Below the pieces are notes generated by a model. That model saw only the letters and a program-made list of their open reading frames with translations. It was not told the origin of the DNA and made no database searches. DNA of 62,731 nt from Bigelowiella natans CCMP2755 (taxonomy: Eukaryota; Protista; Cercozoa): assembly GCA_000320545.1 (NCBI GenBank), contig ADNK01000333.1, forward strand, positions 1-62,731, read 5' to 3'. Made by a program: the position numbers and the translations under genes. Positions 49,151 through 54,335 of the stretch are shown here, piece by piece (positions within the stretch are counted from its first letter, which is position 1; every line of letters starts with the position of its first letter).

Positions 49151-49194
<44 letters not shown>

Positions 49195-49265: not shown

Positions 49266-52200
49266 ATGCCCCTCTACGCGCTAAAGATCGTGTGTCTCCT
49301 TCTGATTGCTACGACCCAACGAGTCCATGCGGTAGGAACGTGTGGGTCGCATGTCATCGTCCAAGGCAATACTTATTCGACCCCTGATCCCTATGGAAAT
49401 GGTTTCTCTTGTACATTTATCCTTACCGGAATTTCGGGGATCAAATTTGACCGATTCTGGACTGAACCGGGCCATGACTTTCTTCAAGTGCAGAAACTAG
49501 GAGATGGAGGGTTCAACGAATCATTTAGCGGAGCTACAATCCCGGCTTCCATTGGCCAGCATGGTGACTACAGGTTTAATTGGTATTCTGATTATTCGAA
49601 GACATTTTCCGGCTGGTCTTTCACTGTGCTTCCTACTTCATCCGCAACCTGGAGTCCAACCTGGAGTCCAACATGGAGTCCAACCTGGAGTCCCACACGG
49701 TAGCAAAATGTCTTGTGCACGTTTACTTACCTCTACTCTAGCTCTGTCCACGATTGCAGTCGATTTGCAAGCTGCAGTTGGAATCCTATGTCATATGAAC
49801 TTTTGCTATCCATCAATTTACTTCTCCACCTCTCTTCTATTTATTTCTCTTCCTGCCAGCTCATAATTCTCTTTTCCGTACACAAATCATGTTGAAACTC
49901 AACAACATTTTTGTCAATTGAAATCTGGACTGTGCGTGTGCTCTTCACCTTCCCCCCTCCTCCCCCCCCTTTTTTTTAAGGAGTTACCTACAGGAAAAGG
50001 AAATAGAGGGGCTGCGAGAGCTTTGCACAGCACTGGGTGGACCCTCGGCACTTGGTCCAAGATGGGCTGGGCTGTACAACCCTACTCTATATTCTTCTCC
50101 CTGCGACTGGAAGGGCCTAGAGTGTGAGCCATGGATCGGCGATAAAGGAGTCTCATGGCACATTGGCAACATTTCGTTAAGTGGAAAGGGGCTGACTGGA
50201 ACGATTCCCAACTCTCTTCCCCAATTCTTCACATTCCTGCAGGTGCTGGATTTGAGTAACAACTCGATCTCAGGCACGATCCCGGCAGGATTTATATGCG
50301 ATCCGAAGAACCCGGACGGAGCGAGCAAATACATGCTAAATTTTCAAGTGTTCTCAAACCAGCTTTCCGGGACGCTTCCGTCCAACGAGTGTTTGGCGAG
50401 CCGATCCTCCCAGGCGCAGCTTCAATATTTCGCTGCTTATCAAAATTTGCTCTCAGGAACGATCCCTTCAGGGTTCATATGCGATCCGAAGAACCCGGAC
50501 GGAGCGAGCAAGAACATGAAATATTTTCAAGTGTACTTAAACAAGCTTTCCGGAACGCTTCCATCCAATGAGTGTTTGGTGAGCCGATCCTCCCAGGCGC
50601 AGCTTCAATATTTCGGTGTGGGTTATAACCCGATCTCAGGCACGATCCCGGCAGGATTTATATGCGATCCGAAGAACCCGGACGGAGCGAGCAAATACAT
50701 GCTAGATTTTCAAGTGTACTCAAATCAGCTTTCCGGAACACTTCCGTCCAATGAGTGCTTGGCGAGCCGATCCTCCCAGGCGAATCTTAAATTTTTTGGT
50801 GCAGGTCTAAACTTGCTCTCAGGCACAATCCCGGCAGGATTCATATGCGATCCGAAGAACCCGGACGGAGCGAGCAAACACATGCTAGATTTTGAAGTGT
50901 TCTCAAACCAGCTTTCCGGGACACTTCCGTCCAACGAGTGTTTGGCGAGCCGATCCTCCCAGGCGAAGCTTAATTTGTATTATGCATCGAGCAACTCGCT
51001 TTCAGGCACGATCCCGGTAGGATTTATATGCGATCCTAAGAACCCGGACGGAGCGAGCAAACACATGCAACATTTTGCTGTTGACTCAAACCAGCTTTCC
51101 GGGACGCTTCCGTCCAACGAGTGTTTGGCGAGCCGATCCTCCCAAGCGGAGCTTCACTTTTTCGCTGCTTTTCGAAATTTCCTCTCAGGCACGATCCCTG
51201 CAGGGTTCATATGCGATCCGAAGAACCCCGACGGAGCGACCAAGAACATGAAACAAGTTGAAGTGTTCTCAAACCAGCTTTCCGGGACGCTTCCGTCCAA
51301 TGAGTGTTTGGCGAGCCGAACCTCCCAGGCGAATCTTCAATTTTTTGGTGCAGGTCTAAACTTGCTCTCAGGCACGATCCCGGCAGGATTCATATGCGAT
51401 CCGAAGAACCCGGACGGAGCGAGCAAGAACATGAAACATTTTCAAGTGTACTCAAATCAGCTTTCGGGCACATTGCCGTCGAACAAATGTGTAGGAAGTC
51501 GAACTAATAGCACCACATTTAGTCCATTAAGCATATTTGAAGCTTCCGACAACATTGTGTCCGGGCATGTTCCTAGTAGTTTGTTCAATCTTGGAAGTGA
51601 AATTAGGTCTGGCATATTGGGACTAGCAAGATGCCATCTCTCTGGAGCCATCCCACCGGATTTGCAACGGGTTACGAGTACGAATCTTCATGTTGTTGAT
51701 CTAAGCCAAAATGATCTATCTGGAAATATTCCTGACCTCACACGGTCTTTTCCGAACCTCACAGTTCTCTCCCTGTCCTCGAACCGGAATCTCAAGGGAC
51801 GTCTTGATTCATTGCCTATGGCAAGATTGCAGTATTTGCTAATTGATGGGACTCTTTTGAGTGGTGATCTTGGTGCTCTAGGTTCCATGATGGGTCCAAA
51901 GAAAATTCATCTTGCAGGTAATCAGTTGAGTGGAACGATTCCGGAAGCGTTGTTCCTCCATTCTAGTTTAGAGGAGTTAGTTCTTTCGCATAACCGTGTG
52001 AGTGGTAGTCTTCCAAACGCAGTTGGCAATGCCCGCGGTATGAAAAAGTTGTTGCTAGATACGAATAGAATCGAGGGTCAGCTTCCTGACACTCTTGCGG
52101 ACGTGTTGCCTATGCTTCAAGAAATTTCCTTGAACCTGAACGAAATATCATGCGAGTTACCAACCAGATTGCAGCACACAGGGGCATTTGAAAGCAACAA

Positions 52201-54335
52201 TGGAACAAGGGGGGGCGTGTCGGTACAAATCGTACAAGGAAACATGTTTGGATGTCGTGGAATTGACGCACTTTCTAAGGTAGATGCGTATGGCAAAGCA
52301 TACCAATGCGGATATAGTGCCTTCCTCGCCCCTTTCTACGAGTCAATGGGCATGATTGTCTTAATTGCAGGAATAGGTGTGTGCATTGTTTGCCGCAAGA
52401 ATTCTATCAATTGGAAGCTTTTATGGGGCTGGGTGCTGGGGAGGGAACAAGGGCTTCTCCCACGCGCATCGCGCGGGGTGTTCTTACTTAGTGGGGGCAT
52501 ACTTGGAATCGGGCTGCTAGTTGTTGCTGCTGGAGTTCCTACATACGGAACAGCAAGCTCGCACTTTGAGTGCCAGTACGCAAACAAGTTCTCATTGGCA
52601 TTTGTGGAGAAAGCTCCCGAGTCAGCTTCCCACACCCATTATGCGGTGGAATGGGTGACGACCACTTTGCTAGCCCTCTCCATAGGAGGGATAGCATTGG
52701 CCATCATCAACTCGCGTCCTTCAAGGCTCAATTGCAAAGAATCCATTGCACTGAGGTTCGTTGGCATCGGCCTTCCCATGTCTTCAAGTGTTTCCCATGC
52801 ATCTGAGACTAAGCAGTCACTTTCTATCATTGGACAAAACCAATACAAGAAATTAGAAAGCAATGGTGGTAGCGACAGAGAAAGCGTGTCGGTGAGCTGG
52901 CAGCGATGTCGCACAGCATTGCTGGTGGCGCGTGTCACATTTGTTGTAATTTTGCTACTAGCACTCATCATGTCGACGAGCATAGCACAAGTGTACGTTG
53001 ATATTTCAAGCCGAATATCTAACTCGAACAAGAACTTCATACTCTATGGAATCACATTAATTCACAATGTAATGTCGCTCACAATTTTCCCACTTGGCAC
53101 CAACTTCATTGTTGGAGATTTGTCCGAGCTGAAGAGTGGTCGTCGCCAAGCAGGTGTTAGCTTTAGCGTGGCTCTATTGTGGAATACAGTGTCTAATTCA
53201 TTGAGTAACATTTTCGCTCCTGCAATCTCGGAAGCATTTGGCTACGATTCATGCTTGCGCCCGCTTCTAATCCCACTGCAATCTGTTCCTGAGGTCCATG
53301 TAACTACTGATGTGTGTACTTACGGACTAATGCAAAATGGAAAAATCACCGATTGTTTAATCCATGCAACTCTCAGTGCAGGGAAGTATCAGCCACACTT
53401 CGACCTTCGCTCAGACTACTGTACCTCGACCCTTGTTCGCGTGTTTGCGCCGTTCTTCACCACGGCTGTGCTAATGAGGCTTCTTGCACCTGTAATCCAG
53501 AGATACGCCGCATTTTCCCGCCCTCACAAGCTTTTGATGTTCTTCTTTGGGGACGGCAAGTCTTTTGCTGTGTGGCCTGCTTTAGCGAGGGAGATCGGTC
53601 CCCGCAAACTTGCTCGTGCAGTGGAGAAAGTTGTTGAATGTGCATACTGCGAGCAGATGGTGCTGGTGGGCATAATTCTATCAATAGGTATCGCAGCTCC
53701 AGTTGTCGCTGTGGCAGTGGCATTTGTCTCGGTCATCCTGGCTCTGCACTATGTGCACTGGATGTTTGTTCTTGGCACAGTGGTTTGTGAACGAGAGGAA
53801 GAGATCATCCGTGCTGGAGAAACAGAGGTCATTGTTAACTGTGATGTGGTGTACACCTAGAGAGCAGCGTCCCATTGTCGATTTCCTGCCCATTCCATTA
53901 ACTTAGCCGTGTCACAACAACATGTCCTTAGACATTGTGCGACGGGAAGAGAGGGAACGTGAAATGTCCAACATGGAGTGAAGGGGGGGATGTGGCGCGT
54001 TCATGCGTTTGCCCGATGTTTTGCATCCTAGAGCCAGAAACAAATTGAATCTTTTCACTGCCCTGCACCCAAACTGACAAATCTGGGCTTGGGCGAGAGG
54101 AGGGAAAGCGGGGGGGCACAGAGGGCACACGACATGAATCACATCCATGCTTGTGTCTCATGTGTGTCAGGTTGACGGCTCCATTCCATGGACTTCGTTG
54201 CTCGTTCCAGTGACGTGTTCTCTCATGTTTTGGGCAGTGTTTGGGTGGGCAGGTTTGAACTTTGGGTGGCCAGTGGCTGTGTACCTCATCGTACTTCTCC
54301 TGATCATCACTGCCATGAGCACAGTGGCACTCTGA
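49266..54335 (+). CDS. Signal peptide - CUB - (WSPT)4 linker - LRRNT - LRR array - multi-pass transmembrane receptor-like protein
   Basis: Exon 1, 49266-49699: signal peptide and CUB (YGNGFSCTF...FDRFWTEPGHDFLQV...FNWYSDYSKTFSGWSF). Intron 49700-49980 is in matching phase. Exon 2 from 49981: LRR cap EIEGLRELCTALGG...CDWKGLEC, plant-type LRRs (LxLxxNxLSGxIP), then several hydrophobic helices. A probable phase-0 intron 53828-54170 leads to a last exon with two more TM helices ending at 54335; unspliced, the ORF stops at 53860. Confidence 0.85.
50267..51480 (+). repeat. Coding tandem repeat, 183-bp (61-aa) unit, about 6.5 copies
   Basis: FICDPKNPDGA codons start at 50291, 50474, 50657, 50840, 51023, 51206 and 51389, an exact 183-bp spacing. 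Confidence 0.95.

What the first reader, a model, noticed from the sequence alone, without database searches (positions are those of the whole stretch)
50267..51480. LRR array with frozen scaffold and hypervariable ligand face: candidate diversifying recognition receptor
Each 61-aa unit holds two unusually long Cys-containing LRRs. The segments FICDPKNPDGASK, NQLSGTLPSNECLASRSSQA and SGTIPAG are near-identical even in DNA. The x positions of LxxLxLxxN vary widely. Strand A: YMLNFQVFS, NMKYFQVYL, YMLDFQVYS, HMLDFEVFS, HMQHFAVDS, NMKQVEVFS, NMKHFQVYS. Strand B: QLQYFAAYQ, QLQYFGVGY, NLKFFGAGL, KLNLYYASS, ELHFFAAFR, NLQFFGAGL. Established: these positions form the concave binding surface, which is diversified in plant R proteins and lamprey VLRs. 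Units 3 and 6 share nearly the same B strand but have different A strands, suggesting cassette shuffling or gene conversion.
Basis: partly seen in the sequence, partly recalled or inferred. Interest (0 to 1): 0.8.

Follow-up and report, generated by a model that had tools for sequence, protein, structure and literature searches.

The report
Diversifying LRR array, Bigelowiella surface receptor
A surface-receptor gene of the alga Bigelowiella natans has six and a half near-identical double leucine-rich repeats that differ almost only at binding-face residues, a pattern known from plant and brown-algal receptors but here joined to an unknown many-pass membrane domain.

Summary
Window 50261-51465 holds 6.6 tandem copies of a 183-bp unit. 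Each unit encodes a 32-aa and a 29-aa Cys-containing plant-type LRR.

The organism is Bigelowiella natans. The gene has three exons (49266-49699, 49981-53827, 54171-54335). It encodes a signal peptide, a CUB-like domain, a linker, about 24 LRRs and a many-pass membrane module without a kinase.

Variation sits on the five solvent-facing beta-strand positions of each LRR. Codon likelihood gives omega 3.8 there (P 3e-6) against 0.29 for the scaffold. One paralogue gives 4.9. A third gives 1.8, which is not significant.

Between paralogues these positions are saturated (dN 0.8-1.0). The same positions in the membrane-proximal LRRs are conserved (dN 0.07-0.15).

Units cluster by gene, although the 7+6 repeat layout is ancestral, so the arrays evolve in concert. 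Half-units have discordant histories (P 0.002-0.009), which indicates gene conversion.

I found no donor cassettes and no sign of somatic assembly. Polymorphism could not be tested, and neither the ligand nor the function is known.

This is a new variant of a known kind. The scan found similar LRR arrays elsewhere in this genome.

The parts
49266..49699 (+). Exon 1: start codon, signal peptide, CUB-like domain (a lead only) and a Pro/Thr/Trp/Ser linker encoded by a 12-bp repeat
   Evidence: ORF and sequence. A GT donor at 49700 is in phase with exon 2. The Atlas feature search gives CUB clusters at 0.81-0.83, below the level that counts as more than a lead. Pfam finds nothing. JGI's model of paralogue C1714 (P0001) starts with the same domain.
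49700..49980 (+). Intron 1 (GT-AG)
   Evidence: Contigs of run X15, whose record does not say it is RNA (I take it as RNA because it skips this intron and carries the exon 2/3 junction), give zero depth in bin 49744-49904. One of them begins to match at 49980 with 56 unmatched letters upstream. The splice phase fits.
49981..53827 (+). Exon 2: the whole LRR ectodomain and most of the membrane module in one open frame
   Evidence: Open frame of 1312 codons. X15 contigs cover it.
49994..50269 (+). N-terminal cap and first, non-repeated LRR
   Evidence: Translation. Helices and strands in the AlphaFold2 model, residues 1-92.
50270..51463 (+). The array: six full 183-bp di-LRR units plus a seventh A-LRR (7 A-LRRs of 32 aa, 6 B-LRRs of 29 aa). 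Variable codons are unit positions 21, 23, 24, 26, 28 and 50, 52, 53, 55, 57, 58, 60.
   Evidence: Omega at the solvent-facing positions is 3.76.
51464..52321 (+). Divergent last B-LRR, about ten non-repeated membrane-proximal LRRs and a Cys-rich C-terminal cap. The concave-face positions here are conserved between paralogues.
   Evidence: dN at these positions 0.07-0.15. Pfam LRR_1, LRR_4 and LRR_8 hits lie here.
52322..53827 (+). Many-pass membrane module of unknown family (exon 2 part)
   Evidence: Hydropathy peaks. No Pfam, PDB-sequence or Atlas match. Only 59 relatives among 1.84 billion representatives.
53828..54170 (+). Intron 2 (GT-AG)
   Evidence: An X15 contig matches up to 53829 and then continues with letters that match 54173 onward.
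54171..54335 (+). Exon 3: two more hydrophobic helices and the stop codon

Best explanation
The array is the ligand-binding part of a cell-surface receptor-like protein of Bigelowiella natans. The protein has a signal peptide, a CUB-like domain, a linker and a plant-type LRR solenoid of about 24 repeats. It ends in a many-pass membrane module instead of a kinase.

Thirteen of the LRRs form a 6.5-unit tandem array of alternating 32-aa and 29-aa Cys-containing repeats. Unequal exchange and short gene conversion between units keep the structural scaffold of each paralogue's array uniform, which is concerted evolution. Selection for amino-acid change acts on the five solvent-facing beta-strand positions of each repeat.

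As a result every repeat, and every paralogue, offers a different concave surface. The diversity is fixed in the germ line over evolutionary time. It is not assembled somatically.

Shown here: the repeat anatomy, the splicing, the fold class, the position of the variable residues on the inner strands, omega above 1 in two of three paralogues, concerted evolution, and mosaic units.

Inferred: that the concave face binds a fast-changing external ligand (microbe, virus, prey or mating partner), and that binding is passed on by the membrane module.
For: Anatomy.

Organism and family: (best hits are JGI Bigna1 models).

Splicing and transcription.

Fold: the AlphaFold2 model has pLDDT 80, with strands at unit positions 24-28 and 53-57. 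Foldseek's top matches are FLS2, RGFR1, BRI1 and PEPR1, at E 1e-27 to 1e-25.

Selection: pairwise estimates give dN at the solvent-facing positions of 0.69/0.45/0.46 against scaffold dS of 0.33/0.22/0.095. The bootstrap ratio is above 1 in all three genes. Codon likelihood gives omega 3.76 (P 3e-6), 1.76 (P 0.05) and 4.89 (P 5e-6). With half-unit trees and with local synonymous sites only, the window gene gives 2.8-4.5 and C943 gives 5.3-7.0.

Internal control: between paralogues, the same positions in the proximal LRRs have dN 0.07-0.15, against 0.8-1.0 in the array.

Concerted evolution: scaffold dS is the same for units of equal and of different index between genes. Units cluster by gene with support 100, 83 and 97. 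There are 3-12 fixed scaffold differences between arrays. A distant environmental relative has the same 7+6 layout.

Mosaic units.
Against: - In paralogue C1714 omega is not significantly above 1. With local synonymous sites it is 0.81.
- In the window gene the conserved codons inside the strands have dS 0.68, equal to dN at the solvent-facing positions. A pairwise reading with local sites alone is therefore compatible with neutrality; only the likelihood version gives 2.8 (P 0.012).
- Recombination between units breaks the single-tree assumption and can inflate such tests.
- I had no coordinates of the model, so the direction of the side chains rests on the general LRR rule.
- No ligand, expression response or population variation is known. 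RNA depth is low: 4 raw reads in about 6% of run X21.
Confidence: 0.7

Rival explanations
1. Relaxed constraint, not selection. The solvent-facing positions are simply free to drift. Homology-dependent conversion keeps resetting the similar scaffold segments but cannot act across the diverged strand segments. The strands therefore look older than the scaffold, and omega measured against scaffold synonymous sites is inflated.
For: In the window gene, strand-core dS (0.68) is higher than loop dS (0.27) and equals dN at the solvent-facing positions. C1714 gives omega 0.8-2.0, not significant. Conversion tracts are real.
Against: In C943 the strand-core codons are almost identical (dS 0.055) while dN at the solvent-facing positions is 0.46. 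With local synonymous sites only, omega is 5.5 (P 0.0014). The solvent-facing codons also cluster by gene, so they too were homogenised and have diverged since. The same positions in the proximal LRRs are strongly constrained, with omega about 0.12, so these positions are not free by default in this protein.
Confidence: 0.17
2. An adhesion or self-recognition protein, for example for gamete, cell-cell or substrate contact, rather than a sensor of foreign molecules. The fast change on the binding face comes from sexual or social conflict.
For: The evolutionary signal does not tell these ligand classes apart. A CUB-like domain and a Pro/Thr/Ser-rich linker are common in adhesion proteins (established knowledge; the CUB assignment is only a lead).
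Against: Nothing here speaks against it. It differs from the best explanation only in the ligand. The large polytopic module, conserved at omega about 0.3, suggests signalling or transport rather than a plain anchor.
Confidence: 0.1
3. A somatically diversified receptor in the manner of lamprey VLRs, or of the recombination proposed for Ectocarpus, with units exchanged within the lifetime of a cell line.
For: Mosaic half-units. Several adjacent codons change at once while neighbouring silent sites stay fixed.
Against: The germline gene is a complete open frame. A whole-genome DNA search finds the unit only in the three arrays, so there is no cassette store. Contigs of two DNA runs match unique parts of the array without differences, and no indel or joint was seen. 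The one divergent contig is explained as a graph chimera between units 4 and 5.
Confidence: 0.03

Closest known systems
Plant LRR receptor ectodomains with hypervariable solvent-exposed residues (LRR receptor kinases such as FLS2 and Xa21; receptor-like proteins such as Cf-9)
   Same: The plant-type LxxLxLxxNxLSGxIP repeat. A superhelical ectodomain whose best structural matches are FLS2, RGFR1, BRI1 and PEPR1. Replacement changes concentrated at the x positions of the inner strand with omega above 1. Sequence exchange between repeats and paralogues. That last pattern in plants is from my own knowledge; a review is listed (PMC3645687).
   Different: No kinase and no single-pass anchor; the protein ends in a many-pass membrane module. 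Repeats are 32 and 29 aa rather than 24, each with one Cys. The variable part is a strictly periodic tandem array evolving in concert. The host is a rhizarian alga.
Ectocarpus LRR-ROCO and LRR-kinase candidate receptors (Zambounis et al. 2012, PMC3341825)
   Same: An algal LRR family in which repeats compared with each other show positive selection on the concave face. The reported omega of 3.5-5.9 is in the same range as here. Repeats are shuffled within and between genes.
   Different: In Ectocarpus each LRR is its own exon and shuffling is at exon level, and the proteins are cytoplasmic ROCO GTPases or kinases. Here the whole array lies in one exon, the protein has a signal peptide and a membrane module, and exchange is by conversion inside an exon.
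Lamprey and hagfish variable lymphocyte receptors
   Same: A conserved LRR scaffold with diversity confined to concave-face residues, and mosaic repeats.
   Different: VLR genes are incomplete in the germ line and are completed somatically from flanking cassettes (established knowledge). Here the gene is complete and there are no cassettes.
Ribonuclease-inhibitor-type LRRs
   Same: Alternating A and B repeats of 28 and 29 residues containing Cys. That is the layout of the more distant family members, C3191 and the environmental P0122. The comparison with ribonuclease inhibitor is from memory and is only a lead.
   Different: The sequence motif is the plant type (LSGTIP). The protein is extracellular. 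The A repeat has grown to 32 aa in this subfamily.
Other homogenised LRR arrays of the same genome noted by this scan (s1-721193, s1-417347, s1-724912, s1-728107)
   Same: Near-identical repeats that differ at binding-face codons.
   Different: Those have different unit sizes (69 bp, or one exon per LRR) and belong to different gene families. I did not examine them.

Membership tests
Plant-type (plant-specific class) LRR ectodomain | Repeats matching LxxLxLxxNxLSGxIP, detected by LRR profiles | tested here: met
   Pfam LRR_1 43.3 bits (cut-off 20.6), LRR_4 37.9 and LRR_8 31.7 (cut-off 27). The motif is visible in every unit.
Plant-type (plant-specific class) LRR ectodomain | Superhelical solenoid fold like solved plant receptor ectodomains | tested here: met
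   AlphaFold2 model: pLDDT 80.3, pTM 0.75. Foldseek: FLS2 4.1e-27, RGFR1 1.6e-26, BRI1 4.4e-25, with TM-scores up to 0.65.
Plant-type (plant-specific class) LRR ectodomain | N-terminal cap of the LRRNT_2 type | tested here: inconclusive
   Pfam LRRNT_2 is not reported for the window protein. A helical cap with a conserved Cys and Trp is present. A distant family member, P0137, has a weak LRRNT_2 hit.
LRR receptor kinase | Cytoplasmic protein kinase domain | tested here: not met
   No kinase family in the Pfam scan of the 1205-aa ORF or of the membrane part.
LRR receptor-like protein (RLP) | Single transmembrane helix and a short tail | tested here: not met
   About ten hydrophobic segments over about 560 residues.
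Receptor under diversifying selection at the LRR concave face (R-protein-like evolution) | Omega above 1 at solvent-exposed strand positions, with purifying selection on the scaffold | tested here: met
   Omega at these positions against the scaffold: 3.76 vs 0.29 (window gene) and 4.89 vs 0.20 (C943). C1714 gives 1.76 vs 0.44, borderline.
Receptor under diversifying selection at the LRR concave face (R-protein-like evolution) | Multigene family with sequence exchange | tested here: met
   (at least eight loci). (significant mosaic tracts).
Receptor under diversifying selection at the LRR concave face (R-protein-like evolution) | High allelic polymorphism in populations | not testable with these tools
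   All holder runs carry one organism label. Their contigs break inside the array and show no reliable variant.
VLR-like somatic assembly system | Incomplete germline gene plus a store of donor LRR cassettes | tested here: not met
   Complete open frame. A DNA search of the whole genome finds only the three arrays.
Ectocarpus-type exon-shuffled LRR receptors | One exon per LRR | tested here: not met
   The array lies within the single exon 49981-53827.
OSCA/TMEM63-like channel module (proposed by scan note s1-724822 for a relative) | Sequence or fold match to the OSCA/TMEM63, TMEM16 or TMC families | tested here: inconclusive
   No Pfam family at E up to 5. Profiles A2 and A3 find no such chain among PDB sequences. 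The AlphaFold2 model of the module has pLDDT 38, too poor for a fold search.

The most novel reading that the evidence does not exclude
Chlorarachniophytes have a receptor class of their own, in which a germline-diversified LRR binding arm is joined directly to a channel-like many-pass membrane module. The ligand bound on the variable face would then gate or pull on that module. Intragenic gene conversion would serve as the routine generator of new repeat combinations. Together with the other homogenised LRR arrays of this genome, that would amount to an independent, rhizarian form of innate recognition.
Probability: 0.15. Interest if true: 0.75.

Novelty: new variant of a known kind. Interest (0 to 1): 0.45.

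Why it matters
Receptors whose LRR binding face evolves under diversifying selection are the backbone of plant immunity. They have been proposed for brown algae, but nothing comparable is described for Rhizaria, and searches of the paper library found no account of this family.

Here the signal is clean and has an internal control, because variable and conserved concave faces occur in the same protein. The binding arm is attached to a rare, unnamed membrane module found only in chlorarachniophytes and a few marine contigs.

That gives a concrete candidate for asking how a marine unicellular alga senses microbes, viruses or partners. It also gives a small, tractable case of concerted evolution and diversifying selection acting on the same repeats.

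Tried and rejected
- Membrane module. Pfam at lax thresholds, Atlas features, PDB sequence searches with two profiles, and a metagenome contig scan gave nothing usable. Its AlphaFold2 model was too poor (pLDDT 38) to search by fold, so I ran no fold search on it.
- CUB assignment of exon 1. Pfam and PDB sequence searches are blank. Atlas features give only sub-threshold CUB leads.
- Polymorphism and copy-number variation. Logan contigs of DNA runs break inside the array. The only differing contig (50936-51104, 7 differences) turns unit 5's strand into unit 4's. The shared scaffold stretch there is longer than a 31-letter word, so I read it as an assembly-graph chimera, not an allele.
- Assembly artefact. 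Rejected, because three paralogues and a distant environmental relative share the same 7+6 layout.
- Independent amplification in each gene as the reason units cluster by gene. Rejected for the same reason.
- DGR-like or base-specific hypermutation. The variable codons change at all four bases and often at two or three positions. I made no formal test.
- No model coordinates were available to scripts, so exposure of the variable residues could not be computed.

Full report
OBSERVATION

Tandem Repeats Finder reports one array at 50261-51465 with period 183, 6.6 copies, 84% matches and score 1662. The array lies in a 1312-codon open frame on the + strand.

In that frame the units start at 50270+183k. 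Each encodes 61 residues: a 32-aa A-LRR and a 29-aa B-LRR with one Cys each. There are seven A and six B repeats, and the last B repeat is divergent.

Pairs of units differ by silent changes only at most scaffold codons, and by replacements only at positions 21, 23, 24, 26, 28 and 50, 52, 53, 55, 57, 58, 60. Entropy averaged over three paralogues exceeds 1 bit at ten positions. Eight of these belong to the ten x positions that the LRR consensus defines beforehand. By my own arithmetic the hypergeometric chance of that is about 6e-7.

The scaffold is conserved but not frozen. It is 91% identical in DNA, against 64% for the variable codons.

WHAT THE GENE IS

The best database hits are JGI Bigna1 models, so the organism is Bigelowiella natans, a chlorarachniophyte.

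Contigs of run X15 give no depth in the bin 49744-49904. One contig starts matching at 49980. Another leaves the stretch at 53829 and continues with letters that match 54173 onward. The run's record does not say it is RNA; I take it as RNA because it skips one intron and joins exon 2 to exon 3.

Together with splice signals in phase, this gives exons 49266-49699, 49981-53827 and 54171-54335. Expression looks low, with 4 raw RNA reads in about 6% of run X21.

I searched the model exon by exon, by reference. It was joined once, inside a script, only for a hydropathy scan.

The parts of the protein are:
- Exon 1 encodes a signal peptide, a domain for which CUB is only a lead, and a linker.
- Exon 2 encodes a cap, about 24 LRRs, a Cys-rich cap and a many-pass membrane region.
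- Exon 3 adds two more hydrophobic helices.
- There is no kinase.

The AlphaFold2 model of the ectodomain has pLDDT 80.3. In every unit it places a strand at unit positions 24-28 and 53-57, and a second short strand over the xLSGT motif. Foldseek matches FLS2, RGFR1, BRI1, PEPR1 and similar plant receptor ectodomains at E 1e-27 to 1e-22. That alternate strand residues face the concave surface is established LRR knowledge. I could not compute it, because no coordinates were available.

FAMILY

The genome holds three full-length close paralogues: the window gene, C1714 and C943, about 70% identical in protein. Each has the same 7+6 array.

There is also a truncated copy with only the membrane module (C593) and more distant members (C3191, C2461, C1226, and C1218/C3482, which are near-identical to each other).

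A profile of the membrane module finds only 59 representatives among 1.84 billion proteins. All seven members scanned, six of them over 1000 aa, carry N-terminal LRRs. Sources are B. natans, Lotharella globosa and marine or unlabelled contigs.

One environmental relative (P0122) has seven 28-aa and six 29-aa Cys-LRRs, and C3191 is similar. The alternating layout and the repeat number are therefore ancestral.

SELECTION

Pairwise Nei-Gojobori estimates within arrays give the following:

| Gene | dN at x positions | Scaffold dS |
|---|---|---|
| Window | 0.69 | 0.33 |
| C1714 | 0.45 | 0.22 |
| C943 | 0.46 | 0.095 |

The bootstrap ratio over codons is above 1 in all three genes.

I wrote a codon likelihood model with a shared synonymous clock and one omega per partition:

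| Gene | Omega at x positions | Omega, scaffold | P (omega at x = 1) |
|---|---|---|---|
| Window | 3.76 | 0.29 | 3e-6 |
| C1714 | 1.76 | 0.44 | 0.05 |
| C943 | 4.89 | 0.20 | 5e-6 |

Robustness checks:
- With a separate tree for each half-unit, omega is 2.8 and 4.5 (window), 7.0 and 5.3 (C943), and 2.0 and 1.8 (C1714, not significant).
- With only the strand codons, so that only local silent sites set the clock, omega is 2.8 (P 0.012), 5.5 (P 0.0014) and 0.81.

The weak point is the window gene's strand-core dS of 0.68 in the pairwise estimate. That leaves room for a neutral reading in this copy taken alone.

There is an internal control. Between paralogues the array x positions are saturated (dN 0.8-1.0, scaffold dS 0.5-0.7), while the x positions of the membrane-proximal LRRs have dN 0.07-0.15, an omega of about 0.12. 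These positions are therefore not free by default in this protein.

CONCERTED EVOLUTION AND CONVERSION

Scaffold dS between genes is the same for units of equal index and of different index (0.59 vs 0.61, 0.67 vs 0.69, 0.52 vs 0.53), so no positional orthology is left.

Units cluster by gene on scaffold sites: support is 100 for C943, 83 for C1714 and 97 for the split from the window gene. They also cluster by gene on the variable sites.

There are 12, 7 and 3 scaffold sites where all six units of one gene differ from all six of another. One example is Ser in place of Asn at position 44, which removes the N-glycosylation sequon from all six B repeats of the window gene.

Because the 7+6 layout predates these genes, this is homogenisation, not separate amplification.

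Half-units have discordant histories:
- In the window gene, units 3 and 6 share a run of 21 polymorphic sites over the B strand (global P 0.002).
- In C943, units 1 and 4 have identical B halves but A halves only 88.5% alike.
- In C943, units 1 and 2 have A halves 99% alike (P 0.006-0.009).

WHAT IT IS NOT

It is not VLR-like. The gene is complete and the unit occurs nowhere else in the genome. DNA contigs of two runs show no indel or joint.

It is not the exon-per-repeat system of Ectocarpus.

It is not shown to be OSCA-like. An earlier scan note proposes that fold for a relative's membrane module. My sequence tests are blank and my model of the module was too poor to use.

VERDICT

This is a germline-diversified LRR binding face kept on a homogenised scaffold.

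Function as a recognition receptor is inferred. The pattern is a known kind. The new elements are the host lineage, the di-LRR unit and the unknown membrane module.

The scan has noted similar homogenised LRR arrays on other DNA of this genome. I did not check those.

Noticed in passing
window 52322-54335; relatives P0122, P0124, P0125, P0137, P0142: The many-pass membrane module is a rare unnamed family. It has 59 representatives among 1.84 billion proteins, from B. natans, Lotharella globosa and marine contigs. All seven members scanned (six of them over 1000 aa) carry N-terminal LRRs.
   Followed up: partly
G000:C943:24493-25636 (+), in L027: Head-to-head with paralogue C943 lies a stretch with three tandem copies of the CUB-like exon-1 domain, 83-86% identical to the window's.
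   Followed up: no
G000:C593:6513-8324 (-), in L026: A truncated paralogue. Its open frame starts in the last LRR and holds only the membrane module (73% identical). The search found no array of this type on that contig. It corresponds to JGI model 82801.
   Followed up: partly
window 50402-50404 and the same codon (unit position 44) in each unit: All six B repeats of the window gene have Ser where C943 has Asn in all six and C1714 in three. The Asn also recurs in several, not all, B repeats of the distant relatives. The N-x-S glycosylation sequon was therefore lost from the whole array of this gene.
   Followed up: partly
window 50936-51104: Logan contigs of two DNA runs differ here at 7 places. 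Two of them (51069, 51071) turn unit 5's strand residues into unit 4's. This is most likely an assembly-graph chimera across a shared scaffold stretch longer than the word size, but a real variant is not excluded.
   Followed up: partly
window 49155-49190 and 49645-49693: A (TC)18 microsatellite lies just upstream of the start codon. A 12-bp repeat (4.1 copies) encodes the Pro/Thr/Trp/Ser linker at the end of exon 1.
   Followed up: no
P0182 (JGI Bigna1 80031): A 2981-aa B. natans protein sits in the same 90% cluster as the LRR-plus-module protein P0124. It may be a much longer or fused gene model.
   Followed up: no
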